NCBI RefSeq assembly: GCF_947568905.1
Contig: NC_079170.1
Coordinates: 15,810,001-15,874,000 of the forward strand
Length of the DNA: 64,000 nt
Direction of reading: 5' to 3'
DNA from: Ostrea edulis
Lineage: Eukaryota
Below the pieces are notes generated by a model that saw only the letters and a list, made by a program, of their open reading frames with translations, was not told the DNA's origin and did not search any database. This document shows, piece by piece, positions 1,711 to 36,193 of the stretch (its first letter is position 1; the number at the start of each line of letters is the position of its first letter). Both the position numbers and the translations under genes were made by a program.

Positions 1711-3872
1711 GACTTACTTTTTTGCACGTATAAGTTATATATAACTCTTTATTAAGCTACAATTTATATATAATATGTCTGTAATATTCAACAAGATTTT
1801 TTTTGTATCATAAACATTACGTTGTAGGTAAGTATTTTGATATTATCTACGAACATACAACATTAATTTCATATTTATATTTATCTGCACGGCTTAGTTA
1901 TAGATCTAAATAGGCTCGTCTTGTAACAAGAACTTCAATCGTCTGCGAAATCCTATAGGCCTATCTTTAGGTTCACTAACTCGTTTTAAATGTTATATTT
2001 GGGGGATGGTTATTAAACATGGGAAAAATACGATACTGTACTTTACTCAAGATATCAAAGTATAATTCGATGATCATAAAACTAGCCCATGTACTGAGCA
2101 CGGCATGTTGACGCCCAGTCCCAGCCATTTGTTTACATGTCAGATGTATACATCGACGATCTGTCAAAACAGTGGCGGATCTGGTATTTTTTTTAAAGAG
2201 AGTGAGTGTTTAAAGGCTTTAGAATTTTATTTCACACCCTTTCCGCAGCATTTCTTCTAAAGGTTGGTAAAAAAAAGAGTTAAAATGGGGGCTAGTGATT
2301 CTTGACCAACACTCCAAATTGCTATTCCTAAAACCTAAGACGAAATCTAGGTACCGCAGTATACCGTATAGGCCTATCTAGAGCAAAAAGGGACTGAAAT
2401 GTTGATCATATGTTTTTATATATAAAGCCAAGTCGTTAAATAATAAATTTAGGTAACAAACTGTAATCACTTACCTATTAACTCTGGAATTCTGGAGGAA
2501 TTGTTGTTTTAAAAATTCGTGCCGCTGAATCCGGTCCGTTTACGGTTTTGATTTTATAAATTATAACAAGAACTATTTAATTAATTTCGATATGAGCAAG
2601 ATTACAACCACGAAAAGTTTTATACAGAAAAATATTGTGTATTCAGACAACTCATTGTCCAAATATCGTCATGGTTTACGTTATTGCTCGTAGTAAAATA
2701 AGTTCAATTCAAATGCTATGTTGATCGAATTATCTCCCTATGATTGTAGAGCGCTTTCATGTTTACATTTATGTGACAGTTAAACATCAATGTATCGGCG
2801 AAATAAAAAGAACACAAGAAGATAATTGGTGTCTTTTAATTATTTTATTAGCATATTCAACATTTAAGATAAATTGGACCTAAAAGCAAAGACATACACT
2901 GTCCAAAAATCAATGTTGAACTGATTATTGTCATCACATAATTCGACGATGATCATCCGAAATCTATATTTCATTCCTCGATCATAGATGTACATAAAAC
3001 TTTTCAAAATAATTGGGATATAATTATGCTTTGAGATCCTATGTGAAAATCTATCATTTTATAATGTTTTATAAGGACACGTCTATTTTTTAAATGAGAA
3101 ACTATCATCATTCGATAAATTATGTCTGTGAAAGACCTAAAACAAGAAATTTACGTATGACCACTGTCATCGAACAAATTGAATCCAACATTCATTTGTG
3201 CAGTTTTCATTTCTTTACCCATGTCAGAATTTTTAATTTGTTCGTTGAATGTGGCCAAACTGAAATTTTGAATCAAAGTTCCAAAATTTGTCATTTTTAG
3301 AGAAAAATGTGCAAACGTCACGTGTTATGACATCTACGGCACAGTTATGACGTCACAGAATTAACATTTTGATATGAATATATTTACTACGATGTATATT
3401 GACAATATTTAGTGCAATATTTGTTTGTTAAGTTTCAGATAATTTTTCATAAAAATACAGGGCGATTTTGACCTTTCGTGGCTCTAGCTCTTTATGGTAT
3501 CCTCTATTTGATGCTTTCAACTTCATGAATGAGCAAAGTTCAATAGCTGTATAATCAAATTCTATTTTTCTGCTGATCGTTGCTGGTAATGAACTTTGCC
3601 TTTTGGCATCCTCTTAGAATGTACCACCCTTATGGAAAACAGCTAAAGGAACATACGATGTTATCATTACTATACACTCTATGTAACACTCCAACAAAAG
3701 TTCCAATAAGTAATACAGTTACCATTTAGATATTGAATAAATCTCTGATATTATTCACAATTGATTGATTGGCAATCATTGATTTGTACACAGTGGGGTG
3801 TTTATCACGATCCTGCATCTGCCTCTCTTGGAAATTATACTGCAGAAATGAATACCAGCTGGAACATAATAC

Positions 3873-5129
3873 TCAATATATATCATTCATTGAATTATTC
3901 ATAACATTGTCCGGTCGTTTTTCAAGTTCATAATATCTTTTGCTTTCATCACCTCCTCTTCGTGCTGCATTGTCGTTAAGATAACTCCCCGCTGATGATC
4001 GGCTACTTCCCCTTGAAGTTTTGTTGGTGATAGAATTATCTGAGGCACTACTCGTTCTTGAACTTGGTTTCTGAATGAAGCTTGTTGAATGAAAGTTGTA
4101 CACTTTATCACTGAGTTCATGATATACGTTCGAGCTCCTCGATCGGACACTTGTCGGGCTCTTGTCGTAAAGTGATGGTACTTGTGTTGCTTTTACAGCC
4201 ATCTGTTAACGAAAAATGTACGCGTCTACATATATCAGTAATTTAATATCTTACAATACTTCAGAGAGAGTTGTATATTACCTGAAATGATGCAAACATA
4301 CTCTTTCTCAATAAAGATCTATAATCTTTCAGTCTGTTTTAACTTCATTACCACGTGTTTCATGAGAGGTCTTAAAGTTCATGATTTTCAAACAAACTGT
4401 TAAGTCTATGCTAGCTAAGATAAGAAATTATAGTTCTTTTTACCTTGACAGTGTCTTCGACATCACTATACACATGAAAATTATCCAAAATGATTGCTTG
4501 ATTTGGGTTACTAAACATAGGTGGTGTTTGTGTGTTGCCTCTGCTAAAATATAAAAGATATTTTCCTTTTACACAGTTCGCAATATTCTGAAGGTACATC
4601 CACCGAAATAATTGATTAAAAAAAGAGCACAGAAAAAGGAATTGATTCTTTGTTTTCAAGTGACATAATGAGATAAACGGAGAAAGGAAGATATAATGAC
4701 ATCCTTCTCAGATACTGACTGTGATCTGTGCTTGTACCATCGTATGGTCAAAGTAAGTAAGATACCAACGACACAACCTGCTATTCCGCAGCTGAAGGCC
4801 AGAATCCAATCTAGACATAAGTTTGAAATGAAAATTTTAATAACCATACATACATTTATTTGCATTCATATTAATATTTACTCCTTTTTGTTTACATCAT
4901 ATCCATTTCAGGTTGATAAGAAGAAAAAAAATCCACGTATTTGAACAAAATGCATTCAAAATGTGAATGTTTACTACTAAATAATTATAAACGATAAAGC
5001 CTTATTTGACAACAGTTTGGCTGTTAAGGACTATTTTTTGTTGTGGAGAAATTTTGTAAAGATAACACTAAAAACTTTGATATCTTTTAATTATCAAACA
5101 GTGCGCTTTGGCAATTTGTTAATGAAAAG

Positions 5130-5197
<68 letters not shown>

Positions 5198-7458
5198 AAG
5201 ATATATCAAAGAGCACCAAGGTAAATTTTACAAATCGTGAGATCGTAATCTAACTAACTTTTAATTATGCAATATTTGCATAAAGTAGAATTTGTATAAT
5301 GAAATACTCGTCCTCTCTTTACATATAAAGGATTACCTGGATGGTTTGTTAAATCACTAATGCTTGAAACGCCAATTACAGTGATATTTTCTGCAAAATG
5401 ATACATAAGCAAAATGATACATCAACAATTTTTAGATCAAAGGTGAAGATAACGAACAGTGATCAATCTCATAACTCCTATAACCAATACAAAATAGATA
5501 TTTGGGCAAACACGGACCCCTGGACACACCAGAGTTCGGATCAGGTGCCTAGGAGGAGTAAGCATCCCCTGTCGACCAGTCACACCCGCCATGAGCCCTA
5601 TATCCTGATCAGGTAAACGGAGTTATCCGTAGTCGAAATCAGGATGTTAGGAGGGGCCTAACAATCGATATAAAACACGTCAGACAACATTTGATCCAAT
5701 GATAGGTTGTATTGATGGACTAGATCGTTATAACGACCATAGAATTTGCAAAATGCTGACTTCAATCGATGCTGTTGAAACTGGATCGCACGCACACGTA
5801 CGAATGCATACACATTACACACATTCTTTTTTTTTTAATCTGAGTACAATTTCAAACTCTGAACACTTTCTTGATTTTTTTCAGCCGTGTTTCTGGTCTT
5901 CGTCAGGCGTGAACCACAATTTGGATGGCTATGAACACCAAGAATTTTGATGGTTTTCTACGTCCCTCAACCTTCATAAATCGAGAGGCTGTGTATTCGA
6001 GCCATGTTCGCGCCATGATACAACAATTTAATATACTCCTTACTATATTCCTTACTATACCTAGGATATCGGTAAGATTGCTTCTTCGCCAAGCGCTTAA
6101 CACTTAGTGAGAATCATGGGCCTTTCGGATATGACATTAAAAACGGAGGTCCCATGTCACGGCAGGCGTTGGCAAGTTAAAGCACACTTACTGCCACGGC
6201 CCTGAGCGCTAACCATAAGTCTAAATCTGTTGTATATAATCTACAGCTGAATGTGTGTATCAGTATATCAGGAAAACATTCTCGACGAGACGTAAAACAA
6301 ACAATAAATTAATTAATTCATACAACGACACATAAAAAAGATTGTCTTTGAAAAACTTACCATTTTGATCTCTTAAATCACAGGTTATAGAGATCCAGGT
6401 CATTATGCACTTTGATATATTACAGTGTTTTGCGTTGAAAATGGAGGTGTTACTTCGTTGGTTCAACAGAAGCTCTAGGGTGTAGCTGACACAATGTGCC
6501 TCATCGTGTAAAGAATTGTTACTTTCAAATTGGCCGCTGCAGTTTATTGTACAGACCCTGGCTATAGAAATAAAGAAATACAGTGTTTAACGAATTTCCG
6601 AAGCTTAAGTTAAAATAATAATTACTGGTGAATGCAATATCTAAAATGATTTAGTTTGAACCATTTTCTTGAAGTTTGTCGTAAGGGCAGCGTTGTTGTG
6701 ATAATTCGTCGTGAATGTTGATTGCATCCTCAAAGCACCAGTTGCTTTTAAACCTGGGAAGTGGAATTCAGAAATCATCGTTAGGGTAACTGGGAATCAA
6801 ATTTAAAGGAAATCCATGGGTGCATATTTAAGTATGTCAATGAATTTTAGAAAGTATGGAACTCACGACGGCAAGAGAGTTGATGACATAGAGAATATAC
6901 CGCCTCCCGCTATCTTGACCCAAACCAATAAATCTGAAATAAATGTTGTCAAGAAATACTTACATATTATGAATTTATAAATGACAAGCTTGCCATATAT
7001 ATAAAAAAATTGTAGGATGACAACAATATGATTTGTATAAGATCTGCATGTTTTCAAAAGAAAACGACCCTGGATGTTGAGGAATGCAATAAAATGTTGT
7101 GCAGAAATTTCTATTTTTATATTCAAGCAACAATATAGTGTCGATACATGTATATTTATTAAAATCTCTACGTTCAGAATAAAGATGACTGCAAAACAAA
7201 GCATATATACTAAAGTATTAATAATATAAGCTTGGAAAAAATGAAACGCCTCATGATATATTACTCAGTTCTTTTGATTTCGTACTTTACCATGAATGGT
7301 AAATTCTAATAGAATTATGGATAAATTTAATCAGTGCATTCCAAAAAACTGATACATTTTTCATTATTAAATTGACTAGGAAAAATATATTTCCTGATCT
7401 TCAGGTAATTGATTAAATGACACCAATAGTGAAAAAATTGGGGTTTTGTGGGGGGAAG

Positions 7459-7506
<48 letters not shown>

Positions 7507-8930
7507 GTTATCGATACAGTATGTATGAAATGTGAAGATAACGAACAGTCCCTTATGTAGTATACATATATCCCTGTGAGTTCGAAGCAAAAGACACCAC
7601 TGAGTCGTCCACTTCTGCTTCATACTTAGATATTTTATTGAAAGTAGACATTAATGGCAAACTGACTGCTCAACTGTATATGACAAACGGGATGATTTCA
7701 GCTTCTCCATCGTCAACTTCCCATATTTATGTAGCAATATTCCATTATCACCTGCATATGGTCTTTATATCTCTCAATTGATTTGATAGGCAAGAGCTTG
7801 TTCTGTATTTGGTCAGTTTTTAAATCAAGGCCAGTTACTGACAAACAACTTGATGGTACAGGGGTTTCAACAGTCTCGATTGAAGTAGCATTTTGCAAAT
7901 TCCATGGTCGTTATAACGAACCAGTTCGTCAATACAACCTATTATTGGGTCAAATGCTCTCTGACGTGTTTCATACAAATTGTTAGGTCGTTCTTGGCAC
8001 ACTGATTTTGACTACGGATAACTCCGTCTACCTGATAAGGATATAGGGCTCACGTCAGATGAGACCTGTCGACAGGGATGCCTGCTCCTCCTAGGCACCT
8101 GATACCACTTCTGGTTTGTCCAGGGGTCCGTGTTTGCCAAACTCTGTATTCTGTATTGTTTATAGGAGTTATGAGATTGATCACTCTCCCTACCAAACCC
8201 TAGCTTGTTTCTGCTATAATGATATATTTTACATTAAAATTGATGACGAATTTACTGAATGCCAACACTGGATTTTCACTCAAATCTTTCGTCTTGCATA
8301 AATAGACACGAAGTTCGGTGTTTATATGACCGTATCTTTTTGTTTTTGATGTATATACTATGTACATTTATAATAAATATATCAATTTTTGCCGTGCATT
8401 TTTCAGGCAAATCTTTATGATATTTCATTAAACTTCACCTAAATGGATTTCCCGCTATTTTCTGCAGCCATGAAATTTGCTCTTGATGTACAAAAAATAG
8501 TGTGCCCGTTTTATTTCATAGAATTAACACTATCGACAAACAAATAAATAAACATAACACATTCAACATGGATTGAATATTCCTTTGCGCGTGGAACAAA
8601 AATGAAAAATTTGTCAATGCCCTCGAGAAATTGATTCATTTATGACTTTGCAATCAATATGATTGTGTCCATATTTATACGCTTAGTTATGCTTAGTTGT
8701 ATAAGATATGTCATCATTTTATTTTATAATCCTCCCTTAAAATCTAACCACCCACTGTCGGTTATGTTTGATTACAATTATGATGCTCTCACTGTGCGAG
8801 AAATACAAACCTAGAATTGTTAGAAGCTACTGCGTGAACAGAAAGATTCATTTTCAACTTTTTAATTTTTACACTTTATTTCTAATTAGTGACAATTGTA
8901 CTTACATAAACATCGCCTTAGATATGTCAT
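3873..8930 (-). CDS. Gene A1: single-pass type I membrane protein, Cys-rich ectodomain plus Tyr-motif tail, about 301 aa, 7 exons
   Basis: Exons: 8930-8906, 6933-6867, 6753-6662, 6561-6361, 4810-4720, 4543-4444, 4202-3873. All introns are GT-AG with phases 1,2,1,1,2,0 and the frame is open throughout: MTYLRRCLYLLVWVKIAGG...WCFEDAINIH...RCP...VCTINC...HCVSY...HCNISKC...TC...DWILAFSCGIAGCVVGILLTLTIRWYKHR...VYSDV...VYHEL...YYEL...NDIY*. Confidence 0.85.
5135..5196. repeat. (TA)n microsatellite
   Basis: Direct reading; the paralogous copy at 26350-26400 is shorter. Confidence 0.95.
5440..5790 (-). mobile_element. Penelope-like retroelement 3' fragment (paralogous copy at about 26646-26996)
   Basis: AAGGTGAAGATAACGAACAGTGATCAATCTCATAAC...GGAGGAGTAAGCATCCCCTGTCGACC...; the reverse complement encodes the RT C-terminus also seen at 7620-7986 and 43478-43728. 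Confidence 0.7.
6090..6232 (+). mobile_element. Mollusc SINE fragment (Meta/MESC-type central domain; copy at about 27296-27438)
   Basis: GGGCCTTTCGGATATGAC...AAAACGGAGGTCCCATGTCACGGCAGGCGTTGGCAAGTTAAAG resembles 18085-18325 and 46045-46290. The family name is from memory and was not searched. Confidence 0.55.
7459..7508. repeat. (GT)n microsatellite
   Basis: Direct reading; the paralogous copy is at about 28666-28703. Confidence 0.95.
7560..8185 (+). mobile_element. Penelope-like RT C-terminal fragment in intron 1 of A1 (truncated copy at about 28745-29092)
   Basis: Encodes YLDILLKVDINGKLTAQLYDKRDDFSFSIVNFPYLCSNIPLSPAYG...FCKFHGRYNEPVRQYNLLLGQMLSDVFHTNC, with an internal stop. Confidence 0.8.
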
Positions 8931-9335
8931 TGTCTCTTTCCAAATATCGCCTCAATTGCTTAATTTTTACGATGGAAATTTCTAATAGTAAGGAAAAGGT
9001 ATTAACACAGCTTTTTACACATCAAAAGCCATGGAAAACACTGAACAAGTTCTTCCTGGTCAAACAAGATATATGCGAGTTTGTGGAATTACCCATCCAT
9101 GGAGTTAATACTGCGGAAGCAATTAAAAGTTAAATGTTTCTTTCCAGAGGTTAATGTTACATTATTTTTCTATTTCTATAGGAACCATATCTCCATCTAC
9201 ATCAGAAGCATTTGCAAAAGTCAGGAATCCTGCTATTTCTGTTAGATCAAGGGAAGGGATTATTCTCACTGCTGATAGATCACACAAAAGAGAATTTTCT
9301 TGTTCTATTTCATTTTTCACGGAATGGATGATAAA

Positions 9336-9860
9336 GTGAAGATAATGAACGGTGACCAATCTTATAAATACCATACGATTACAAAATTGAGAGTAGGTCA
9401 AATCCTTGGGTATACTAGGTGTGGGATCTGATGTCTAGGAGGAGTAAGCATCCCCTGTTGACTTGTGACACCCACCGTGAGCCCTATATTTGGATCAGGT
9501 CAATGGAGTAATCCGAAGTCAAAATCAGTATGTAAATGATGACCTAGCAATTAGTATGAAATACGTCAGACAGCGTTCTGCCGTATAATAGGTCGTACTT
9601 GCAAATTAGAACATCATAATGACATAGCATTTGCAAAGTGCTGACTTTAAACGAGACAGTTGAAATACCTGAAACATCAACATTACTTGTCATTAATCTC
9701 TCTCGAGTTAAAAATCGATCATACGCAGAAGATTTTTCCGCATATCAATCAGTTGAGAGATGTAAAAACCATCTTCAGGTGATGAGGGAATATTACTACA
9801 TGACTATGGGAAGGTGATGCTGGAATAGGTGATGTCATCCCGTTTGTCGTGAATTGATCA
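9336..9860 (-). mobile_element. Penelope-like fragment (paralogous copies at about 23043-23560, 30183-30700, 36668-37150)
   Basis: Same family as 5440-5790; it follows the 70-bp unit region in every paralogous block. Confidence 0.7.
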
Positions 9861-9904
9861 GATATGGAAGACTCTATTTTCTGATATTATCACCTACTTT
9901 CGGA

Positions 9905-10033
9905 AGGTCGGTGGTCTCTTCCCAGGTGCATTGTATCCGGGTTCTCTCTTCCACCAACAAAAACTGGGCGCCACCATATAACTGAAAAATTGTTGAATAG
10001 GGCGGAAAACATCAAATCAAATCAAATCAAATC
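9905..10033 (+). mobile_element. SINE 3' end with (AAATC)n tail (copy at about 30750-30878)
   Basis: ...TCCACCAACAAAAACTGGGCGCCACCATATAACTGAAAAATTGTTGAATAGGGCGGAAAACATCAAATCAAATC... It is absent from the paralogous blocks at about 23.6 kb and 37.2 kb, so it is a later insertion. Confidence 0.65.
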
Positions 10034-11109
10034 ATATTATCACCGGTGTTAGAACGACTTTACTCAATCTGAGAGAGTCATAGAGCTTTTTTGTCTTTCA
10101 CTGCTGCAACGTCTTTGATTGTTTATGTGATGACTATTTTGAATGACTTTTAGTGTCGGTCAAACAGTAATTAATGATCTTAGACGGATAGTCTAAAATT
10201 GTCAGTTAGATTTTAATGAAAGTGGTGAAAGTGCTGTTAGCAGTTCTCAAAAATGTGTAAAAGGGTATTTTCTAAAAGACTTCCGGATTCTTGACAATTA
10301 AATATAACATTTCTATTTCCCAATCCTAAACAATTTTTCATTCACTTAAGAAATGAAAGTTATAATTCTATATCTGATGCATGTATCAAATGAAAAACTG
10401 GACGGAAAACTTCTGAAAGGAAATTTTCCGTTTCACAATTTGTCAGCCGTATTGAATTTCTCGGTGCTTTTACCAACGCATGTATTGTACATGGTGTAGA
10501 AGATGTACACCAAAATGTGTACACCTTTGCATTTGATTACGAAAAGGTGTACACTTTGTGGTCGGTGTAGACAAATCAAGCACACCCTTAGTAAAGGAGA
10601 CTGTAAAACAACGAATTGCAATATATCAAATACATACCATACAGAATTCCGAAAATTCAAAAGGTTAAAATCTCGCTAAATTATAAAACTATGATATTTG
10701 ACATATATTGCGCTATCTTTCTTTGACAGACTAACTGCATACGTTAAGAATATAGACAATGTAACGCTATAATGTAAAGTTCATATCTTAATGTCAATGA
10801 TATTGACATGAGATGCATTGAAGGATATATTGCACTGGTCAATGAGAAACTACACACGAGTTATTGAAACTCGTAATTGTAGAATCCATGTCTATCGCAA
10901 CGGGGACTCTAATCCACGAGCTTAACTTCTCCAAGCGTGGGATGTAACTCTGATTTCAATAAATGCTCCATGGACCTCATCACCAATAAATAACATTTAG
11001 CCATGGGTGTATGTGTTCTTTTGTCCGCTCATTTGATTAGCTGATTATTAAGATTTTTACGCCCTCTCAAAAATGGAAAGGTCAAGCTAACAAACTGTTA
11101 TCGATGAAA

Positions 11110-11430
11110 GGTGAAAATAACGAAAAGTAATCAATATCATAACTCCTATAAGGAAATCAAAATAAAGAGTAGGGCAAACACGGACCTTTGGAACCAGGTG
11201 CCTAGGAGGAGTAAATATCTTCTGTCGACTGGTCACACTCGTTGTGAGCCCTATATCTCGATCAGACAAACGGGGTAATTTGTAGTCAGAATCAGTGTGT
11301 CACGATTGGTTTACCAATCGCAGAATTTGATGCAATGACAGTTTGTATAAACTATTGGCAAACTAGTTTGTTATAACGACCATAGAGTTGGAAAGATTGT
11401 GACAGTAAACGAGGCTGTTGAAACCCCTGT
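11110..11430 (-). mobile_element. Penelope-like 3' fragment (copy at about 31950-32270)
   Basis: GGTGAAAATAACGAAAAGTAATCAAT...GGTGCCTAGGAGGAGTAA...ATAACGACCATAG. Confidence 0.65.
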
Positions 11431-11819
11431 AGCATTTTTTGGAATGGCCGGATGTTTTTCACATGCTTCAATCATATACACTCTGGTCAATCTATTAGTG
11501 ATGGGCCTTTATCGTGCTAAAATCCTCTATGACATGGGATCTCAGTTTTAAATATTCGAAATACCCATGACCTATACTTTTAATGCCAAACACTAGGAAT
11601 AGTTACTACCCATATTTAACCATATGCATTCTCAATTTCTCATCAAACATCCTCACTACTGAAGAACACAATACATTGGTCTACATTTGCAAATCTAGAT
11701 CTTATGCTAAAAAGGGCTTCATACGGACGTCAAATCACAAAATCAAACAAACAATGCAGGATTTATGACATTTTACTGCACATATCTAAAGCTACGTATA
11801 AATCATAATGTTTGAACCT

Positions 11820-14800
11820 TCAGCTACAACCATTATCGTTTTGTATTAATAAATATTCTTTTCCCAATGCATAGTATTTATCACTTCCTGCACTACCTGT
11901 TGGCGAAGTTTTCGTCCGGTCCTTTGACTTTATAGAAGAACTCTCTGCATGAAATAAAAATGAATCTAAAGAAGGATTTCCTGAATGGATGATAACGAAT
12001 TTCCCAAATGAGCTGCCACTTTGAAGTTCGCTCTCCTTTCTCTCGAGTTTACAGCTGTATGCTAGGACATCGCTGGACAAAAACACACTTACATCCATGC
12101 CCATACTCTTCCTCTCTTCCAATCCACCTAGGTGGTGGTAAATGTTTTCTCATGATCTAGAACTCGATGAACTATCATCTTTGTAAGAAGGAACTTGAAT
12201 AGCTTTATTCATCACCTAGTGAGAGAAGAAAAATCACAAAATTCAAATCAATGAAATATTTTTCTCGTTTGGATTACGACCAATTAATGAAAATGAACAG
12301 TGATTAATCTCATAAATATCATGGCAATCTAACATCAAGGACATGCCCAATGCACATTTCCTATACATGATACAGGTGAGATCGAGTGACTAGGAGGAAT
12401 AAGCACCCCGTTTTGACCGGTCACACCCGTCGTGAGTCCTGTATCTTGATTATGTAAATGGAGTCAGCCGTATTCAAATCGACACAGAAAGAATGTAGAC
12501 TACATTTGACTTTATGACATGGAGTATTATTATACCACAGTATGAGAATTCCACGCAACGCGTAATGTGATTAGTCTAGACGGTCACGTGCCAGGGATGA
12601 CAACACTTCATATCTCCCTCTCAAACATCATATCTCCCTATCATATTTAGCCCTTGGGCAGACTCGTGCAATTTCCATAAATTTAACGTCAAGGTAGACG
12701 AAGTCTATTGTGACGTCACAATAAGTCATTCTACTTTCACAGTTCGTAAGGCAGAAAATATGTGGGTCTCTAATACACAGTTGAATCGTATGGTTTTGGT
12801 TGATACAAAAACAAGCAAGTAAATTAGCATTTAAGGAGAATGGAAATACAAAAACTGGTTATCATATCACTGTATTTCGTATGATTTTTCTTGGGTGAAT
12901 AAATCTTCATATCTCCCTCACTATCATGCAATAAATGTATAATAGCAAATAAGATGGTTTTAACAACCGTAGCCTTTACAAAGTGTTGCCTGTAAACAAG
13001 ATAGACAAGACTTGTCCATGTCTTCGCTTTTAAAGATCACCATAAAAACATTTCTTTTAAAATCTATGACTCGGAATAATGTACTCTAAAATTATCTTCG
13101 ATACCAGCATATTCTGCCTCTAATGGATTGATGATGACTCTGCCCTCAGGTAAACCACTTCTCTCTTGGTGACTAGGCTGATAGGATACTGGTGACGGGA
13201 ATCGATTGCTAAACAAATAAAATCATTGATACTATTTGATAATTTTAAATGTAATCACTGAGTCAAAACATCATGTTTCTAGATAGCGCAGATTTCATGG
13301 AAGTTTTCTAAATCTAAATTTTTCCTAATTTATTGAAACGCTGAACAGTTGTGTTGTATGTACATAAAAATGAAGCCACGGACTATGGAAATTAAACTAA
13401 AATGGGAAAATGGAGGTTGTGAAACAACAAAAATGAAATAATTCCACAAGATACATATAACTTTTTTATATGACGATCAGTTTTCTGTGTATATGGGAAG
13501 AGAAATGATATATGTACTAAACTAGTAGGAAACAGTTTAATTGGTGAAGCAAAATATAAGAGAATCATGAATCTCTTGTAAAATATCAGAGAATCATGAA
13601 TCTCTTGTAACAAGTGCATATATATTTTCAAATGAGGGAATGCCTTAGAGGACAGGACATACTCTTTGTGCCGATTCAGGAGGTTGTAAATCACACGTAG
13701 GATTCCAATTCCAAAGAGACACCCGACAACGAAGCAGGTCACAATTAGGACAGCAATTATACCTGGACCTTGGATTAAATAAAAGGAAAGTTCTTACAAA
13801 CGCTAAATGGTTATCAAATATATCAGAATGATTTTGATATGAAATTGGAATGTAATAACTTACCAAGACATTCATTTTCATTCTCGTTGTTGTGTTCGAA
13901 TATATCGAGACGGTCTGTATTCTTGCCCTGCGTCCAACATTCAATGATTATGTTTTCGATTATGCACTTTTCAATACCACATAGACTGTCTGTCATCTGC
14001 GTTGATTTCGTTTCATTATAGTGAAAATTGATTTTGTATTCAACACAATGAGATTGCTCAAATAGATCATCATTGAATACATATATTGCTTTGCATGACA
14101 CCGAACATGTATTGTTACCTGAAAAAAAAATATATCGTGTTGATGTCATTGTTTTCTTTCATCAAAAAGTGGCAAATAATGAAAGAAATCGTTATGAAAT
14201 GATCCTACCTTTGTGTCTATTTGATATATCCGGTAGAGGACAGTTTTGGTCGGGCATCGTTGCATGCACTTGTAAAGCTTGTTCCAAACATATTTTTCTG
14301 AAGTTTTACAAAACATATTGGTACCGTATAAGTTTTACATTGAAAAGAAACGTATGAGGTGAAAACAAATGTGTATGTATCTAATATGATCGTATTAAAC
14401 AAGAATTAGAATCTTATATATCGTTTAAACACACCTTTCATTTTGGGGAAAGCACAGGACTTTCTTAGGAATATCCATCGTGAAGCACAGAATAACACCT
14501 GCGTTGTATTGAAATAATGTTTGGATGAAATAAAGATGAAATGAATTCTGATAAAAAATAAAGATGTAAAAGATTGAATCATAATCAATAGATCCCATAA
14601 CGGATTTATGCTACAGAAAATAGTTTTTTGTTTGTAAATCAGGATTTAGGTTATGAAAGGCCTGGTTTAAAACCAGAATTTCACAAATATAACAGGTCAT
14701 TAAGTCGAATGCTCTCTGACGTGTTTCATACCAATTGTTAGACGGATCTTTACATACAGAGTTTTACTACGAATTACTCAGTTTATCTGATAAGATATAG

Positions 14801-15366
14801 GGCATATAACATTTATGACCGTTGAACAGACAATATTTACTCCCCCTAGACATCTGCTCCCAATTCTGGTGTTTCCAGGGGCCCGTGTTTACCAACTCAT
14901 AATTTTATATCATTTATTGGATTCAATATAACAAACAGTGAGGAATCACACAATTCTATATTACACTGCATCATATCACTTTGTGAATCATCTCAGATCA
15001 CTAAATAAAGTTAGTAGTGTTATCCACTGAAACGCAGAATTCATGGCTCTGAGGGACATCTTCAGATTGATTCATTCATGACTTTGCAATCAATATGATT
15101 GTGTCCATATTTATACACTTAGCTATACTTAGTTGTATAAGGTATCTCATCATGTTATTTCATAATCCTCCCTTAAAAGCCAACCACCCACTGTCGGTTG
15201 TGCTTGATCAGAATTATAATGCTCTCACTGTGCGAGCAATACAAATCTATAATCGTTAGAAGCTATTGCGTGAATAGAAAGATTCATTTTCAACTTTTAA
15301 ACTTCCACACGTTATTTCTAATTAGTGACAATTGTACTTACATAAACATCGCCTTAGATCTGTCAT
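11820..15366 (-). CDS. Gene B1: family member with a premature stop in the last exon (242 aa truncated; 352 aa if read through)
   Basis: Exons: 15366-15342, 14498-14435, 14297-14209, 14118-13864, 13768-13663, 13208-13085, 12215-11820. Phases match A1. MTDLRRCLCVILCFTMDIPKKVLCFPQNERKICLEQALQVH...NCP...TCSVSC...HCVEY...LCGIEKC...ECW...NECLGPGIIAVLIVTCFVVGCLFGIGILR...EYAGIEDNFRVMNKAIQVPS...SRS* with TGA at 12152-12150 (CGA in B3). Confidence 0.8.
14690..14910 (+). mobile_element. Penelope-like 3' fragment in intron 1 of the B genes (copies at about 35515-35735, 40535-40760)
   Basis: GAATGCTCTCTGACGTGTTTCATACCAATTGTTAG...CCAGGGGCCCGTGTTTACCAACTC. Confidence 0.65.
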
Positions 15367-17639
15367 TGTCTCTTTCCAAATATCGCCGCGATTGCTTAAT
15401 TTTTACGATGGGAATTTCTAATAGTAAGGAAAAGGTATCAGCACAGCTTTTTCCACATCAAAAGCCATGGAAAACACTGAAAAAGTTCTTCCTGGTCAAA
15501 CAAGAAATACGCGAGTTTGTGGAATTACCCATGCATGGAGTTAATACTGCGGAAGCAATTAAGAGCAGTTTTCTGTAAGGACCAAAATATTGCGGCACGC
15601 ACTGAAAAATTTTCCACTATAAATGTCGTCATTCAATTGAAATACATAAACTCTTTAAAAAATATTTGTACACCTATTCTGAAAAGTGACTCGTTTCCAT
15701 AGCAACAGGCTATTTAAATAGAAAAAACAGGAAAAATGGAGTTTTGGGAATTTTTCACTTCAATTTATTATATCGCGAATAATTGACAAGGAATTTTATG
15801 CTACATCCTGAGACAAAGTAGTAACAATCTTGATCAGTATGTAAATTTATCTGGAAATTGTATCATTATTGTACCACAGCTCATAATTCAGACTCAAATG
15901 ACCAGTTTTACTGTGTACTTTGACCAACTCCTGAGCAAAAAGCCAGCCATATGGAAGATAATAAAATATAAATTTAAAAAGAAGGTAAATCAGTTATATA
16001 ATGCAGATAAAAAAAATCAATGGGCAAATTACATTTTATAATAGAAATTTGGCATGGAAAATATGAATTTGTTGAATTTGCACATTGAGTTATCTCCCTT
16101 TGCGGAATTTCTAATGTAGGAGATAATAAGTAGTGTTATTGTTAACAGGAGGGAAAGGAAAGAAATGCAGAAAACATGTGTTTTTAGGGTATTTTAAACA
16201 TCTTTGACCATTACTATATATGTACTGGATGTATTCAAGTGTGAAGGAGTTGATAAATACACACTGCATGTAGTGAAGAGGGTTTCCTGAAAAATTAACT
16301 TCATTGAATATGAATTCAAAGCTCAGCTTGTGTCTACATGTGTACATATATGCACCCGATTTACGCTGTTATATGGTTCGTTCTGTATTTTCCCATTTAT
16401 TGACGGACGCTTGCAACCGACATGTTTAATCAACAAACACTGCTACTACGAAAAAAGTGTATTCATGCCAGTTGGAGAACACAGGTTTACGTAAGTACTG
16501 CTTGTAGATACATTGATAATGTAACATTACCTCACAATGACACGATCTGTTTCTCAGTAAATTAGTGATCAAGTAAATGCATGCAAAATTCATGTTATTT
16601 CACTGGACCAGGGTGAAAATATAATAAATATTTTCTAATGGAGATAATGCTTTTGAGACAGAAGGAGGGAGGGGGGTAAAAGACGGGCGAGGGGGTTGTA
16701 TTGTAATCTTAAAATAAGTAATATACCTGACTGGTTTATTTAACATTAACAATGTTAATTTCACCTACTTTTCAATATTTAAGGTTAAGATAAATGTTAT
16801 ATTTATTCTAATAGTGTTCAAAACATTTGTTCATCACGTACGTTAAAAACAGATTGTTCTATTCATGTGAATTATGAAAATGAAACTTTCAGTTTCTCTC
16901 CCCCCCCCCTCTCTCGTGATATAATAACAGTGATGATAATGCTTTTAAAAAAGAAACAATGTCTGTAAATTATTTCAATGACCACATGCCTTATATAGTT
17001 TGTGATGAATTTCATTAAATTTTGACAAATTGTGCGTTTTTCTTCTTCTAGGATTTGTGTTGGAAAATGGAGATTCTAGAGAATTTATCGAATTCAAGTG
17101 ACAACAATAATAAGGTACATGTACATGTATATGCTATTGTATTACTTGAAATGTGCACCTGTATAATATGTGTACAGTTGTTCCATTGACAATGCATATC
17201 TATATAAATAATAAACTATCCCTTCTCATAATTATTTACCATAGACCCAAATTTCAAAATAATTTGCTCAAGGTCACAGATAACAGAGAATAGAATCATT
17301 TGTTGCTGCATCACTTTTTGAATTAGTTAATGTCAAGGTTTCAAAATATTTAGAGTTGTAGCTTTGTATCAGAGAGGCATGAATCAATACACTAAATGCA
17401 CAAACATGTACTTACAGGGGGACCAGAAAGTGTGCATGAACCATAAACTGAGGTCACTTGCAGATATCATTAAAAGATGTGGTCTATATTGACTTTTTTA
17501 AGTGTATGATACCATAACATCACACATACTGCGGGGTGATATGGGGGGGGGGGGGGGGCGTATGTAATCCAAGACCGTCAGATGTTCGAGGTTAATATTG
17601 GTTGGTTATGGTTGTTTGTTTTACATTCTATTAAAAGAA

Positions 17640-22998: not shown

Positions 22999-24711
22999 GA
23001 GAATATTCTCGTTCTATTTTATTTTTCACGGAATGGATGATAAAGTGAAGATAATGAACAGTATACTTATCTTATAAATACCACAAGAATACAAAACTGA
23101 GAGTAGGTCAACTACTGATCCTAGGATATACTACGGGAGGGATCTCGTGACTAGGAAGAGTAAGCATCCCCTGTTGACTGGTGACACCCACCGAGAGCCT
23201 TATATTTGGATCAGGTAAATGGAGTAATCCGAAGTCAAAATCAGTGTGCAAATGATGGTCTAGCAATTAGTATGAAACACGTCAAACAGCGTTCTGCCGT
23301 ATGATAGGTCGTACTTGCAAATTAGAACATCATAATGAAATAGCATTTGCAAAGTGCTGACATTAAACGAGACAGTTGGAATACCTGAAACATTATTTGT
23401 CTTTAATCTGTAGCGATTTAAAAATCGATCATACGCAGGACATCTTTCCGCATATCAATCAGTTGAGAGATGTAAAAAACATTATGAGGGAATATTACAA
23501 GATGACTATGGGAAGGTGACGCTGGAATAGGTCGTTTGTCATGAATATCAGTGGTCTGATTGACGTTAGTGTCTATGTTCAATAAATAATCCAACTATTG
23601 ATCAGATATGGAAGACTCTATTTTCTCATATCATCACCGGTGTTAGAACGACTTTACTCAATTTGAGAGATTCATAAGAGCTTTTTTGTCTGTCTTTGAT
23701 TATTTATGTGATAACTGTTTTGAATGGATTTTAGTGTCGGTCAAACAATAATCAATGAACTTAGACGGATAGTCTAAAATTGTCAGTGACGAAAGTGCTG
23801 TTAACATTTTTCAGAAATGTGTAGAAGGGTATTTTCTAAAAGACTTCCGGATTCTTGACAATTAAATACAAAATTTCTATTTCCCAATCCTAAACAATTT
23901 TTCATTCACTTAAGAAATGTAACTTATCATTCTTTATCTGATGCATATATCAAATGAAAAACTGGACGGAAAACTTCCGAAAGGAAATTTTCCGTCTCAC
24001 AATTTTTCAGCCATATTGAATTTCTCAGTGCATTTACCAATGCATGCCATGTATATGGTGTAAAAGATGTACACCAAAACGTGTACACCTTTGCACTACG
24101 GAAAGATGTACACTTTTTAGTTGGTGTAGACAAATCTAGCCCGCCGTTAGTAAAGGAGTCTGTAAAATATCACGTACGTCTTGTCAGTCTAACCAGTTGG
24201 TATATGCATAGATCGAATAGAAGAAGATAGTCAGGGAAACAGCTTATGTCATCAAATTATATCTGGATAAGCAAACTAAAAAAATTAACGATGCATGCCG
24301 ACTCAATGATTATCATACAAAGATTAAGAATTGATATTGAAAATTTTCACTCATATATGCTCCTTTTAAACTGGATAAGTCCAGAGTGGAACATTATGGA
24401 TCATATTCAAATAAATTGATAGACGCGTGCACGGATCAGTTTAATGTTATATTTCTGACCCAAATATACGTAGGTGTGTCCTGCAATGAATTCTAAAAAA
24501 TAATAAATGACATTAAATGGAGGAATTGAATCAGGTCGTGTGCATCTTGTACTTTGTGTATAATTATGGCAAATTGATAATTTCCAATTCTAAATATATA
24601 ACTAATTAGTGAAATGATCATTAACGATACAAAACAATTTAAATGCAAGATCATTTTAGCCCTAATGATAAAAACAGGCATTGACCTACATCTATTTGAT
24701 AAAGGAAATTG

Positions 24712-26345
24712 ATGGTATCCTCTATTTGATGCTTTCAACTTCATGAATGAGCAAAGTTCAATAGCTGTATAATCAAATTCTATTTTTCTGCTGATCTTTG
24801 CTGGTAATGAACTTTGCCTTTTGGCATCCTCTTAGAATGTACCACCCTTATGGAAAACAGCTAAAGGAACATACGATGTTATCATTACTATACACTCTAT
24901 GTAACACTCCAACAAAAGTTCCAATAAGTAACTGTTACCATTTAGATATTGAATAAATCTCTGATATTATTCACAATTGATTGATTGGCAATCATTGATT
25001 TGTAAACAGTGGGGTGTTTATCACGATCCTGCATCTGCCTCTCTTGGAAATTATACTGCAGAAATGAATACCAGCTGGAACATAATACTCAATATATATC
25101 ATTCATTGAATTATTCATAACATTGTCCGGTCGTTTTTCAAGTTCATAATATCTTTTGCTTTCATCACTTCCTCTTCGTGCTGCATTGTCGTTAAGATAA
25201 CTCCCCGCTGATGATCGGCTACTTCCCCTTGAAGTTTTGTTGATGATAGAATTATCTGAGGCACTACTCGTTCTTGAACTTGGTTTCTGAATGAAGCTTG
25301 TTGAATGAAAGTTGTACACTTTATCACTGAGTTCATGATATACGTTCGAGCTCCTCGATCGGACACTTGTCGGGCTCTTGTCGTAAAGTGATGGTACTTG
25401 TGTTGCTTTTACAGCCATCTGTTAACGAAAAATGTACGCGTCTACATATATCAGTAATTCAATATCTTACAATACTTCAGAGAGAGTTGTATATTACCTG
25501 AAATGATGCAAACATACCCTTTCTCAATAAAGATCTATAATCTTTCAGTCTGTTTTAACTTCATTACCACGTGTTTCATGAGAGGTCTTAAAGTTCATGA
25601 TTTTCAAACAAACTGTTAAGTCTATGCTAGCTAAGATAAGAAATTATAGTTCTTTTTACCTTGACAGTGTCTTCGACATCACTATACACATGAAAATTAT
25701 CCAAAATGATTGCTTGATTTGGGTTACTAAACATAGGTGGTGTTTGTGTGTTGCCTCTGCTAAAATATAAAAGATATTTTCCTTTTACACAGTTCGCAAT
25801 ATTCTGAAGGTACATCCACCGAAATAATTGATTAAAAAAAGAGCACAGAAAAAGGAATTGATTCTTTGTTTTCAAGTGACATAATGAGATAAACGGAGAA
25901 AGGAAGATATAATGACATCCTTCTCAGATACTGACTGTGATCTGTGCTTGTACCATCGTATGGTCAAAGTAAGTAAGATACCAACGACACAACCTGCTAT
26001 TCCGCAGCTGAAGGCCAGAATCCAATCTAGACATAAGTTTGAAATGAAAATTTTAATAACCATACATACATTTATTTGCATTCATATTAATATTTACTCC
26101 TTTTTGTTTACATCATATCCATTTCAGGTTGATAAGAAGAAAGAAAAAACACGTATTTGAACAAAATGCATTCAAAATGTGAATGTTTACTACTAAATAA
26201 TTATAAACGATAAAGCCTTATTTGACAACAGTTTGGCTGTTAAGGACTATTTTTTGTTGTGTAGAAATTTTGTAAAGATAACACTAAAAACTTTGATATC
26301 TTTTAATTATCAAACAGTGCGCTTTGGCAATTTGTTAATGAAAAG

Positions 26346-26403
<58 letters not shown>

Positions 26404-28663
26404 AAGATATATCAAAGAGCACCAAGGTAAATTTTACAAATCGTGAGATCGTAATCTAACTAACTTTTAATTATGCAATATTTGCATAAAGTAGAATTTT
26501 TATAATGAAATACTCGTCCTCTCTTTACATATAAAGGATTACCTGGATGGTTTGTTAAATCACTAATGCTTGAAACGCCAATTACAGTGATATTTTCTGC
26601 AAAATGATACATAAGCAAAATGATACATCAACAATTTTTAGATCAAAGGTGAAGATAACGAACAGTGATCAATCTCATAACTCCTATAACCAATACAAAA
26701 TAGATATTTGGGCAAACACGGACCCCTGGACACACCAGAGTTCGGATCAGGTGCCTAGGAGGAGTAAGCATCCCCTGTCGACCAGTCACACCCGCCATGA
26801 GCCCTATATCCTGATCAGGTAAACGGAGTTATCCGTAGTCGAAATCAGTATGTTAGGAGGGGCCTAACAATCGATATAAAACACGTCAGACAACATTTGA
26901 TCCAATGATAGGTTGTATTGATGGACTAGATTGTTATAACGACCATAGAATTTGCAAAATGCTGACTTCAATCGATGCTGTTGAAACTGGATCGCACGCA
27001 CACGTACGAATGCATACACATTACACACATTCTTTTTTTTTTAATCTGAGTACAATTTCAAACTCTGAACACTTTCTTGATTTTTTTCAGCCGTGTTTCT
27101 GGTCTTCGTCAGGCGTGAACCACAATTTGGATGGCTATGAACACCAAGAATTTTGATGGTTTTCTACGTCCCTCAACCTTCATAAATCGAGAGGCTGTGT
27201 ATTCGAGCCATGTTCGCGCCATGATACAACAATTTAATATACTCCTTACTATATTCCTTACTATACCTAGGATATCGGTAAGATTGCTTCTTCGCCAAGC
27301 GCTTAACACTTAGTGAGAATCATGGGCCTTTCGGATATGACATTAAAAACGGAGGTCCCATGTCACGGCAGGCGTTGGCAAGTTAAAGCACACTTACTGC
27401 CACGGCCCTGAGCGCTAACCATAGGTCTAAATCTGTTGTATATAATCTACAGCTGAATGTGTGTATCAGTATATCAGGAAAACATTCTCGACGAGACGTA
27501 AAACAAACAATAAATTAATTAATTCATACAACGACACAGAAAAAAGATTGTCTTTGAAAAACTTACCATTTTGATCTCTTAAATCACAGGTTATAGAGAT
27601 CCAGGTCATTATGCACTTTGATATATTACAGTGTTTTGCGTTGAAAATGGAGGTGTTACTTCGTTGGTTCAACAGAAGCTCTAGGGTGTAGCTGACACAA
27701 TGTGCCTCATCGTGTAAAGAATTGTTACTTTCAAATTGGCCGCTGCAGTTTATTGTACAGACCCTGGCTATAGAAATAAAGAAATACAGTGTTTAACGAA
27801 TTTCCGAAGCTTAAGTTAAAATAATAATTACTGGTGAATGTAATATCTAAAATGATTTAGTTTGAACCATTTTCTTGAAGTTTGTCGTAAGGGCAGCGTT
27901 GTTGTGATAATTCGTCGTGAATGTTGATTGCATCCTCAAAGCACCAGTTGCTTTTAAACCTGGGAAGTGGAATTCAGAAATCATCGTTAGGGTAACTGGG
28001 AATCAAATTTAAAGGAAATCCATGGGTGCATATTTAAGTATGTCAATGAATTTTAGAAAGTATGGAACTCACGACGGCAAGACAGTTGATGACATAGAGA
28101 ATATACCGCCTCCCGCTATCTTGACCCAAACCAATAAATCTGAAATAAATGTTGTCAAGAAATACTTACATATTATGAATTTATAAATGACAAGCTTGCC
28201 ATATATATAAAAAAAATTGTAGGATGACAACAATATGATTTGTATAAGATCTGCATGTTTTCAAAAGAAAACGACCCTGGATGTTGAGGAATGCAATAAA
28301 ATGTTGTGCAGAAATTTCTATTTTTATATTCAAGCAACAATATAGTGTCGATACATGTATATTTATTAAAATCTCTACGTTCAGAATAAAGATGACTGCA
28401 AAACAAAGCATATATACTAAAGTATTAATAATATAAGCTTGGAAAAAATGAAACGCCTCATGATATATTACTCAGTTCTTTTGATTTCGTACTTTACCAT
28501 GAATGGTAAATTCTAATAGAATTATGGATAAATTTAATCAGTGCATTCCAAAAAACTGATACATTTTTCATTATTAAATTGACTAGGAAAAATATATTTC
28601 CTGATCTTCAGGTAATTGATTAAATGACACCAATAGTGAAAAAATTGGGGTTTTGTGGGGGGA

Positions 28664-28706
<43 letters not shown>

Positions 28707-34660: not shown

Positions 34661-36193
34661 TACATCAGAATGATTTTGATATGAAATTGGAATGTAATAA
34701 CTTACCAAGACATTCATTTCCATTCTCTTTGTTGTGTTCGAATATATTAAGCTGGTCTGGATTGTTGCCCTGCGTCCAACATTCAATGGTTATATTTTCG
34801 ATTATGCACTTTTTAATATCACATAGACTGTCTGTCATCTGTGTTGATTTCATTTCATTATAGTGAAAATTGATTTTGTATTCAACACAATGATCTTTAT
34901 CGAATAGATCATTATTGAACACATATATTGCTTTGCATGACATCGAACATGTATTATTACCTAAAATAAAAAAAAATATATCGTGTTGATGTCATTGTTT
35001 TCTTTCATCAAAAAGTGGCAAATAATGAAAGAAATCGCTATGAATAGATCCTACCTTTGTGCCTATTTGATAGATCCTGTAGAGGACAGTTTTGGTCGGC
35101 CATCATTGCATGCACTTGTAAAGCTTGTTCCAAACATATTTTCCTGAAGTTTTACAAAACGTATTGAAAAGAAAAGTATGAGGTGAAAACAAATGTGTAT
35201 GTATCTAATATGATCGTTTTAAACAAGAATTAGAATCTTATATATCGTTTAAACAAACCTTTCATTTTGGGGAAAGCACAGGACTTTCTTAGGAATATCC
35301 ATCGTGAAGCACAGAATAACACCTGTGTTGTATTGAAATAATGTATGGATGAAATAAAGATGAAATGAATTCTGTTGAAAAATAAAGATGTAAAAGATTG
35401 AATCATAATCAATAGATCCCATAACGGATTTATGCTACAGAAAATAGTTTTTTGTTTGTAAATCAGGATTTAGGTTATGAAAGGCCTGGTTTAAAACCAG
35501 AATTTCACAAATATAACAGGTCATTAAGTCGAATGCTCTCTGACGTGTTTCATACCAATTGTTAGACGGATCTTTACATACCGATTTTTACTACGAATTA
35601 CTCAGTTTATCTGATAAGATATAGGGCATATAACATTTATGACCGTTGAACAGAGAATATTTACTCCCCCTAGACATCTGCTCCCAACTCTGGTGTTTCC
35701 AGGGGCCCGTGTTTACCAACTCATAATTTTATATCATTTATTGGATTCAATATAACAAACAGTGAGGAATCACACAATTCTATATTACACTGCATCATAT
35801 TACTTTGTGAATCATCTCAGATCACTAAATAAAGTTAGTAGTGTTATCCACTGAAACGCAGAATTCATGGCTCTGAGGGACATCTTCAGATTGATTCATT
35901 CATTACTTTGCAATCAATACGATTGTGTTCATATTTATACACTTAGCTATATTTAGTTTTATAAGGTATTATCTCATCATTTTATTTCATAATCCTCCCT
36001 TAAAAGGTAACCACCCACTGTCGGTTGTGCTTAATCACAATTATGATGCTCTCACTGTGCGAGCTATACAAACCTATAATCGTTAGAAGCTATTACGTGA
36101 ATAGAAAGATTCATTTTCAACTTTTAAACTTCCACACTTTATTTCTGATTAAGGACAATTGTACTTACATAAACATCGCCTTAGATATGTCAT
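32662..36193 (-). CDS. Gene B2: mosaic family member with the same premature stop as B1
   Basis: Exons: 36193-36169, 35322-35259, 35143-35055, 34960-34706, 34610-34505, 34050-33927, 33057-32662. TGA at 32994-32992. Exons 5-7 match B1, exons 2-4 match B3, and exon 1 is A-type (MTYLRRCL). Confidence 0.8.

What the first reader, a model, noticed from the sequence alone, without database searches (positions are those of the whole stretch)
12150..12152. Shared last-exon nonsense change gives tail-less versions (B1, B2) next to a full-length B3, like a decoy/signalling pair
B3 reads TCA CGA GAA (S-R-E), whereas B1 (12152-12150) and B2 (32994-32992) read TCA TGA GAA, a CpG transition. The stop is in the last exon, so it should escape nonsense-mediated decay (established rule). 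The product would be a 242-aa protein with intact ectodomain and TM but without IYHHL, YYAL and EYLLI. The membrane-proximal motif also differs: YAGI in B1/B2 against YADI in B3. The roughly 110 codons after the stop are still open, so the stop is recent. A decoy or dominant-negative role is speculation.
Basis: partly seen in the sequence, partly recalled or inferred. Interest (0 to 1): 0.72.

Follow-up and report, generated by a model that had tools for sequence, protein, structure and literature searches.

The report
Shared stop codon in duplicated oyster receptor genes
Two near-identical neighbouring copies of an oyster-only membrane receptor gene carry the same real stop codon that removes their conserved signalling tail; it arose once, before the copies were duplicated, and they look more like genes starting to decay than like purpose-built decoys.

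Summary
On the minus strand B1 (12152-12150) and B2 (32994-32992) read TGA where B3 (38455-38453) reads CGA. The site is codon 243 in the seventh, last coding exon of a 7-exon gene. The product would be 242 aa, and 109 open codons follow. Contigs from three independent DNA studies carry the TGA, so it is not an assembly error.

B1 and B2 are not independent. They lie in a 12-kb tandem duplication that differs by about 0.45%, so the stop is one CpG transition inherited by both.

The lost tail is strongly conserved across Ostrea, Crassostrea and Saccostrea, including the Arg at the stop position. Using an outgroup contig, 7 exon-7 differences (8 with the stop) fall on the B1/B2 branch and none on the B3 branch. 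Six of the seven are amino-acid changes, some at family-invariant residues. Before the stop, YADI to YAGI removes an invariant Asp. B1/B2 also lack the AATAAA that B3 and paralogue C keep.

No oyster RNA run was available, so expression is untested. B2's ectodomain equals B3's through recent gene conversion, which is compatible with a decoy but does not show one.

My reading: young decaying duplicates about 0.62, functional tail-less receptors about 0.25. Other readers of this scan had already noted the gene conversion and the chimeric first exon.

The parts
12150..12152 (-). B1 premature TGA (codon 243, in exon 7)
32992..32994 (-). B2 premature TGA; same position as in B1
   Evidence: carried by contigs of X6, X10 and X13
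38453..38455 (-). B3 CGA (Arg), the intact state; Arg in the outgroup (AGA) and in most family members
11820..15366 (-). Gene B1. Exons: 15366-15342, 14498-14435, 14297-14209, 14118-13864, 13768-13663 (TM), 13208-13085, 12215-11820
   Evidence: all GT-AG, frame continuous
32662..36193 (-). Gene B2. Exons: 36193-36169, 35322-35259, 35143-35055, 34960-34706, 34610-34505, 34050-33927, 33057-32662
38123..41119 (-). Gene B3, full length. Candidate exon 1 at 41119-41095, then 40343-40280, 40164-40076, 39981-39727, 39631-39526, 39096-38973, 38518-38123
   Evidence: exon 6/7 junction and both exon-6 ends seen in X20 record 20
3491..15562 (.). Duplication unit 1 (gene A1 plus B1)
   Evidence: 98.2-99.0% identical to unit 2; about 0.45% substitutions outside the conversion tract
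24709..36389 (.). Duplication unit 2 (gene A2 plus B2)
34422..35882 (-). B2 stretch 99.1% identical to B3 39443-40903. Exons 2-4 and the introns between them are identical. Recent gene conversion
13103..13105 (-). B1 GGT (Gly) in YAGI. The same change is in B2 at 33945-33947; B3 has Asp at 38991-38993. Asp is invariant in 10 outgroup proteins
12530..12939 (.). 410-bp insertion in intron 6 of B1 (in B2 about 33370-33784), absent from B3; part of a high-copy repeat
   Evidence: very high contig depth and the 33369>33785 joint
38034..38039 (-). B3 AATAAA, 84 nt after the stop. Paralogue C has one at +88. B1/B2 have a gap of about 20 nt in the alignment here; their nearest signal is ATTAAA at +236
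46541..47290 (-). Paralogue C, exons 6-7, intact tail (YSDI, IYHHL, YHAL, EYLIL); Gln at the Arg/stop position

Best explanation
A single C>T change at a CpG turned a conserved Arg codon (CGA) into TGA in the last exon of one duplicate copy, here called B'. B' was already a chimera of gene A's promoter and exon 1 with exons 2-7 of a B-type gene. A later 12-kb tandem duplication (unit A+B') copied the stop into B1 and B2. The B' lineage lost constraint on its cytoplasmic tail for most of its existence and is at an early stage of pseudogenisation. The ectodomain and TM exons are still intact mainly because little time has passed. In B2 they were also just overwritten by B3 through gene conversion. 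If the copies are transcribed, a 242-aa tail-less membrane protein could be made, but nothing shows that selection keeps it. Shown: the stop itself, its single origin, the decay of the tail, and the gene conversion. Inferred: that the copies have no selected function.
For: The TGA is real in three independent DNA studies. B1/B2 lie in a 12-kb duplication with about 0.45% substitutions. The exon 1 of B1/B2 is the gene-A type, also found at 8930 and 29777, while B3 has its own candidate exon 1. The family tail is conserved across oyster genera, including RSRENIYHHL and YYALEKEY. Polarised with outgroup contig L001, exon-7 differences fall 7 (8 with the stop) on the B1/B2 branch and 0 on the B3 branch, binomial p 0.016 (0.008). 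They are 6 amino-acid changes and 1 silent change, matching the neutral expectation of 76% non-synonymous. They include E>G at an invariant Glu. The branch rate of 2.0-2.5% is close to half the intron divergence of 6.3%. Before the stop, Asp>Gly removes the invariant Asp of Y-x-D-I-E. Since the duplication, the three coding differences in the retained part outside the conversion tract are all non-synonymous (D/Y, I/N, M/I), at about 0.8% against a background of 0.45%. B1/B2 lack the AATAAA kept at +84/+88 in B3 and C. No SECIS or other RNA family is present.
Against: All 12 splice sites, the start codon and the 242-codon frame are intact in both copies. Under neutrality this has a rough probability of 0.03-0.23, depending on the time assumed. 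All nine ectodomain cysteines are kept in B1, and B1 against B3 ectodomain dN/dS is about 0.5. B2's ectodomain is identical to B3's, as expected for a decoy. The TGA was the only state seen in three samples, so it may be fixed. Expression was not testable.
Confidence: 0.62

Rival explanations
1. B1 and B2 are functional tail-less receptors. They are expressed, reach the membrane, bind the same ligand as B3 (B2) or a variant ligand (B1), and cannot signal. They would act as decoys or dominant-negative partners of B3.
For: The ectodomain and TM reading frame and all splice sites are intact, with P about 0.03-0.23 under neutrality. B2 is identical to B3 over exons 2-4 through gene conversion, as in vertebrate paired receptors such as Siglec-11/16 (PMC5701461). 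The stop is in the last coding exon. The copy survived a further duplication, and the TGA is seen in 3 of 3 samples. B1's exons 3-4 diverge 2.8 times faster than the introns between them.
Against: There is no transcript evidence. Post-duplication changes in the retained part are 3 non-synonymous to 0 synonymous. The conserved polyA signal is lost. Conversion also happens between pseudogenes and genes: SIGLEC16P converted SIGLEC11 (PMC5701461). Retention through a 0.45%-old duplication needs no selection. Escape from NMD is not established for invertebrates (PMC7072976).
Confidence: 0.25
2. The TGA is an assembly or sequencing error, or B1/B2 is a falsely duplicated haplotype.
For: B1 and B2 differ less than oyster alleles often do.
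Against: Contigs of three independent studies carry the TGA. X10 shows both the B1 and the B2 letter at 32938 at similar depth. Contigs shared by B1/B2 have roughly twice the word depth of B3-only contigs in X6, X10 and X13 (a rough reading, since the tool warns that depth is not copy number). There are no Ns in the window. The two units are separated by 9 kb of other sequence, including a 70-bp satellite.
Confidence: 0.04
3. The TGA is read through or recoded (for example as selenocysteine), so B1/B2 still make a full-length protein.
For: 109 codons after the TGA are open.
Against: That frame stays open by chance with P 0.63-0.71. No SECIS match was found in 11000-12400. The downstream sequence accumulates amino-acid changes at invariant residues at a neutral ratio. 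The codon replaced a conserved Arg.
Confidence: 0.02

Closest known systems
Duplicated (non-processed) pseudogene at an early stage, disabled by a CGA>TGA CpG nonsense change
   Same: It is a tandem duplicate with introns kept and one nonsense change at a CpG Arg codon. The affected region shows a lineage-specific neutral substitution pattern, a TE insertion in an intron and loss of a polyA signal.
   Different: Only the tail is disabled. The first 242 codons and all splice sites are intact, and transcription is unknown, so the pseudogene status is inferred rather than shown.
Vertebrate paired or decoy immune receptors whose ectodomains are homogenised by gene conversion (Siglec-11/Siglec-16, PMC5701461; also KIR, LILR, CEACAM and CD300 pairs, from my own knowledge)
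   Same: These are neighbouring paralogues with (near) identical ectodomain exons through conversion and different cytoplasmic ends. One partner can even be a pseudogene that still takes part in conversion.
   Different: This family is unrelated and oyster-only, with a Cys-rich non-Ig ectodomain. The short partner has no charged TM residue or adaptor motif; it simply lacks the tail. Function is untested.
Human TLR5 392STOP, a common stop-codon polymorphism that acts dominantly (PMC2194120)
   Same: It is a natural nonsense variant of a surface receptor that removes signalling and can interfere with the intact form.
   Different: TLR5 392STOP is an allele of one gene and truncates within the ectodomain. 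Here the stop is in separate paralogues, lies after the TM, and has no functional data.
ITIM/ITAM tyrosine motifs
   Same: The tail holds several conserved Y-x-x-(L/I) motifs.
   Different: None fits the ITIM consensus (S/I/V/L)xYxx(I/V/L); position -2 is A, N, D or K. The two distal motifs are 3 residues apart, not the 6-8 of an ITAM (read). They fit generic YxxPhi or SH2-type motifs only.

Membership tests
Oyster-only Cys-rich type I membrane protein family (RefSeq 'uncharacterized protein' LOC105342943, LOC128160496, LOC111105875, LOC133203517 and others) | Conserved cytoplasmic tail blocks: Y-x-D-I-E, KAIQVPSYK, (RSR)ENIYHHL, SPTGS, YYALEKEY | tested here: met
   phmmer E 7e-28 to 2e-55 for B3 exon 7; alignment. 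B3 has all blocks. B1/B2 encode them too, but with the stop, D>G and E>G.
Oyster-only Cys-rich type I membrane protein family | No described domain family | tested here: met
   Pfam gives nothing above its cut-offs for the tail or for ectodomain exon 4.
Duplicated pseudogene | Disabling mutation relative to functional paralogues | tested here: met
   TGA at a conserved Arg removes 109 of about 175 tail residues.
Duplicated pseudogene | Loss of purifying selection on the whole gene | tested here: inconclusive
   Shown for the tail: 7-8:0 branch asymmetry with 6 non-synonymous to 1 synonymous. For the retained part there are only 3 non-synonymous to 0 synonymous changes since the duplication. 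The ectodomain history is blurred by conversion.
Duplicated pseudogene | No transcription or no product | not testable with these tools
   No RNA run of the organism was offered. No B-type ORF is in the protein collections.
Decoy / dominant-negative receptor | Intact ligand-binding ectodomain and membrane anchor, no signalling tail | tested here: met
   Frame, cysteines, TM and splice sites are intact, and the tail motifs after codon 242 are lost. B2 has an I>N change just after the TM.
Decoy / dominant-negative receptor | Expressed together with the signalling partner | not testable with these tools
   The only RNA-like evidence is one spliced B3-type contig in X20, from another organism label. 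Nothing lay on B2 exon 7 there.
Decoy / dominant-negative receptor | Selection maintains the truncated form | tested here: inconclusive
   Intactness has P about 0.03-0.23 under neutrality, set against 3:0 non-synonymous changes and the lost polyA signal.
ITIM / ITAM-bearing receptors | Consensus (S/I/V/L)xYxx(I/V/L), or YxxL/I-x6-8-YxxL/I | tested here: not met
   The motifs read AEYADI, NIYHHL and DKYYAL-EKE-YLLI.
NMD-escaping last-exon PTC (mammalian EJC rule) | PTC downstream of the last exon junction | tested here: met
   The TGA lies 63 nt into exon 7. The exon 6/7 junction was seen in X20 record 20. Family proteins end in this exon. A 3'UTR intron is not excluded.
NMD-escaping last-exon PTC (mammalian EJC rule) | The rule applies in the organism | not testable with these tools
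   [quoted passage not shown] I found nothing on molluscs. The PTC lengthens the 3'UTR by 327 nt.

The most novel reading that the evidence does not exclude
B2/B3, with B1 as a variant-ectodomain partner, form a decoy/signalling receptor pair in an oyster-only receptor family. The tail-less copies would be expressed from gene A's promoter, kept by selection, and have their ligand-binding part kept identical to the signalling copy by gene conversion. This would be an invertebrate, non-Ig parallel to vertebrate paired receptors.
Probability: 0.2. Interest if true: 0.6.

Novelty: new member of a known kind. Interest (0 to 1): 0.3.

Why it matters
As it stands, this is an ordinary event: a CpG nonsense mutation in a young tandem duplicate, copied once more by a segmental duplication. 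Its main value is for annotation. B1 and B2 should be flagged as truncated or probable pseudogenes, and B3 and C as the intact members of an uncharacterised oyster receptor family. It also shows which tail residues are under selection. If the tail-less copies turned out to be expressed and maintained, the locus would be a compact model of how signalling/decoy receptor pairs arise in an invertebrate immune-type gene cluster through duplication, tail loss and ectodomain conversion.

Tried and rejected
- Assembly error: rejected, because contigs from three independent studies carry the TGA.
- Two independent mutations: rejected, because of the 12-kb duplication at about 0.45% divergence.
- Selenocysteine or readthrough: no SECIS or other Rfam match, and the downstream sequence decays neutrally.
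- Rescue by the internal AG 92 nt into exon 7 (…CACCTAG|GT): it shifts the frame and soon meets TAA (read). Rejected.
- 'Open downstream frame means a recent stop': uninformative.
- ITIM/ITAM membership: motifs do not fit.
- Transcript and annotation evidence:
  - No RNA holder among the runs offered.
  - An exact 33-nt pattern found nothing in the metagenome contigs.
  - Exact ORF look-ups for B1, B2 and B3 were not in the collection.
  - Logan contigs holding paralogue C's ORF proved to be genomic DNA.
  - Protein searches returned no product of B1/B2/B3.
- Literature search for the C. gigas family member LOC105342943: no paper.
Only exon pieces and returned protein ids were used.

Full report
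**1. The observation**

The minus strand reads TCA TGA GAA at 12152-12150 and 32994-32992, and TCA CGA GAA at 38455-38453. A 44-nt pattern around the site occurs exactly three times in the window, against 0 expected by chance. In B3 the C sits in a CpG, so a CpG transition is the natural reading.

**2. Gene models**

All three genes lie on the minus strand and have seven exons with GT-AG borders.
- B1 exons: 15366-15342, 14498-14435, 14297-14209, 14118-13864, 13768-13663 (TM), 13208-13085, 12215-11820.
- B2 is the same at an offset. The offset is 20842 from exon 5 to exon 7 and slightly different further upstream.
- B3 has exons 2-7 at 40343-38123.

The spliced B1 frame gives 242 codons, then TGA, then 109 open codons to the same final stop as B3.

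B1 and B2 start with the same 25-nt exon 1 as gene A (also at 8930 and 29777). B3 lacks it. It has a candidate of the same length and phase at 41119-41095, with a GTGAGT donor.

The run X20 is labelled as a different organism and guessed to be RNA. One of its contigs joins B3-type exon 7 directly to the whole of exon 6 (record 20). Another contig holds exon 2 without its introns (record 22). This supports the exon borders and shows that a B3-like gene is transcribed in a close relative.

**3. B1 and B2 are one event**

A self-comparison shows that 3491-15562 and 24709-36389 are a 12-kb tandem duplication, each unit holding gene A plus gene B. Outside one stretch the units differ by about 0.45% in substitutions. 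Introns 5 and 6a, the TE insertion and the 3' flank have no differences at all. The stop, YAGI, a 410-bp repeat insertion in intron 6 and a 3'UTR deletion are shared by both copies. All of these therefore predate the duplication.

The exception is 34422-35882 in B2. This stretch is 99.1% identical to B3 39443-40903. Exons 2-4 and the introns between them are identical. This is a very recent gene conversion between B2 and B3.

**4. The stop is real**

No RNA run of the organism was offered. I laid contigs of three DNA runs from three studies, plus X20, on 32620-38600.
- X6 record 23 covers 32658-33051 with 0 differences.
- X13 record 8 covers 32658-33059 and differs only at 32938 and 33052, which are the B1 letters.
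- X10 record 1 covers 32969-33246 and differs only at four other places.

No other letter was listed at the stop. The caveats are that contigs drop rare variants and that 206 rows were not shown. B1/B2-shared contigs have about twice the word depth of B3-only contigs in all three runs, and X10 shows both the B1 and B2 letters at 32938. This fits a real duplication, although the tool warns that depth is not copy number.

**5. What is lost**

Pfam finds nothing for the tail or the ectodomain. An exhaustive phmmer search with B3 exon 7 finds 9 relatives. The word search finds full-length RefSeq 'uncharacterized proteins' of Crassostrea gigas, C. angulata, C. virginica, Saccostrea echinata and S. 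cucullata.

The tail is the best conserved part of these proteins. The conserved blocks are Y-x-D-I-E, KAIQVPSYKEDSS, RSRENIYHHL, SPTGS and DKYYALEKEY. The Arg at the stop position is present in most members, and in the outgroup as AGA. Paralogue C in this window (46541-47290 and upstream exons) has an intact tail with Gln at that position. B1/B2 therefore lose two or three family-wide Tyr motifs. None of the motifs fits the ITIM or ITAM consensus.

**6. The B1/B2 tail is decaying**

I used the genomic outgroup contig L001 (P0001, 76% identical) to polarise the exon-7 differences.
- Seven are derived on the B1/B2 branch, eight with the stop, and none on the B3 branch. Two are ambiguous. Binomial p is 0.016, or 0.008 with the stop.
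- Six of the seven change the amino acid, against 76% expected under neutrality.
- They hit residues that are invariant or nearly so: E>G in YYAL-E-KEY, S>F in K-S-V, and R>M/I.
- Near the acceptor, where the intron aligns with the outgroup, both branches show changes. The asymmetry is therefore specific to the exon.
- The branch rate in exon 7 is 2.0-2.5%, close to half the intron 5-6 divergence of 6.3%. The tail has been unconstrained for most of the life of this copy.

Upstream of the stop, Asp>Gly (YADI to YAGI) removes an Asp that all ten outgroup proteins keep.

B3 and C have AATAAA at 84 and 88 nt after the stop. B1/B2 have a 20-nt gap there, and their nearest signal is ATTAAA at +236.

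**7. Is the retained part maintained?**

The evidence is weak in both directions.
- For maintenance: the start codon, 12 splice sites and 242 codons are intact. A rough simulation used the intron-derived indel rate of 0.0875 events per substitution. It gives P = 0.23-0.03 for per-lineage neutral divergence of 1.5-3%.
- Against maintenance:
  - Since the duplication, the three coding differences outside the conversion tract are all amino-acid changes: D/Y in exon 1, I>N just after the TM in B2, and M/I.
  - Their rate of about 0.8% is not below the 0.45% background.
- Uninformative:
  - B2's open ectodomain says nothing, because it was just copied from or to B3.
  - B1 against B3 in the ectodomain gives dN/dS of about 0.5, but the changes cannot be assigned to the period after the stop.
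  - Conversion between a pseudogene and its functional partner is documented for SIGLEC16P and SIGLEC11 (PMC5701461), so conversion is no proof of function.

**8. The NMD argument**

The stop is 63 nt into the last coding exon, so the mammalian EJC rule would predict escape. [quoted passage not shown] For an oyster, escape is an assumption. The stop adds 327 nt to the 3'UTR.

**9. Other readings**

- Recoding: there is no SECIS or other Rfam match in 11000-12400, and the downstream sequence evolves neutrally.
- An internal AG 92 nt into exon 7 would shift the frame into a stop.
- The open downstream frame is expected by chance, with P 0.63-0.71.

**10. Verdict**

The simplest account is one CpG nonsense mutation in a chimeric duplicate, inherited by a later segmental duplication, in copies whose cytoplasmic part is decaying.

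I put young pseudogenes at about 0.62, functional tail-less receptors at about 0.25, and the remainder on artefact, recoding or other explanations. Expression data would decide.

Noticed in passing
window 13864-14297 (B1 exons 3-4) against 39727-40164 (B3): B1's ectodomain exons differ from B3's at 29 of 344 nt (8.4%). The interleaved introns 2-4 differ at only 9 of 300 (3.0%). Silent sites are raised too (dS 0.12). This suggests exon-restricted patchwork conversion from other paralogues, or diversifying selection. All cysteines are kept.
   Followed up: partly
window 21104-22999: A 70-bp tandem satellite of about 1.9 kb (copies about 98% alike) lies between the two duplication units.
   Followed up: no
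window 12530-12939 and about 33370-33784: A 410-bp insertion in intron 6 of B1 and B2 is absent from B3. It belongs to a very high-copy repeat: contig word depths reach 10^4-10^5. Other high-copy stretches lie at 35420-35819 and 36620-37219.
   Followed up: partly
window 41095-41119 (-): Candidate native first exon of B3 (MDMGYTLI, 25 nt, phase 1, GTGAGT donor), unrelated to the gene-A-type exon 1 used by B1/B2. It is not confirmed by RNA.
   Followed up: partly
window 3873-4202 and about 25090-25420 (-): Gene A's last exon is open in both copies but diverged. It keeps NVYHEL and RYYEL, while the distal EKEYL motif reads EKRPD.
   Followed up: no
proteins P0006 and cluster (Logan contigs, probably Crassostrea): A last-exon ORF of 87 aa ends early (…SNGSSKCH) before the SPTGS/YYALEKEY block. 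It has 27 variants on many contigs, so a distal-tail truncation may also exist in another oyster.
   Followed up: no
window 38034-38039 and 46448-46453 (-), against B1/B2: The AATAAA at +84/+88 after the stop is conserved between B3 and paralogue C, and missing from B1/B2 because of a 20-nt gap in the alignment.
   Followed up: partly
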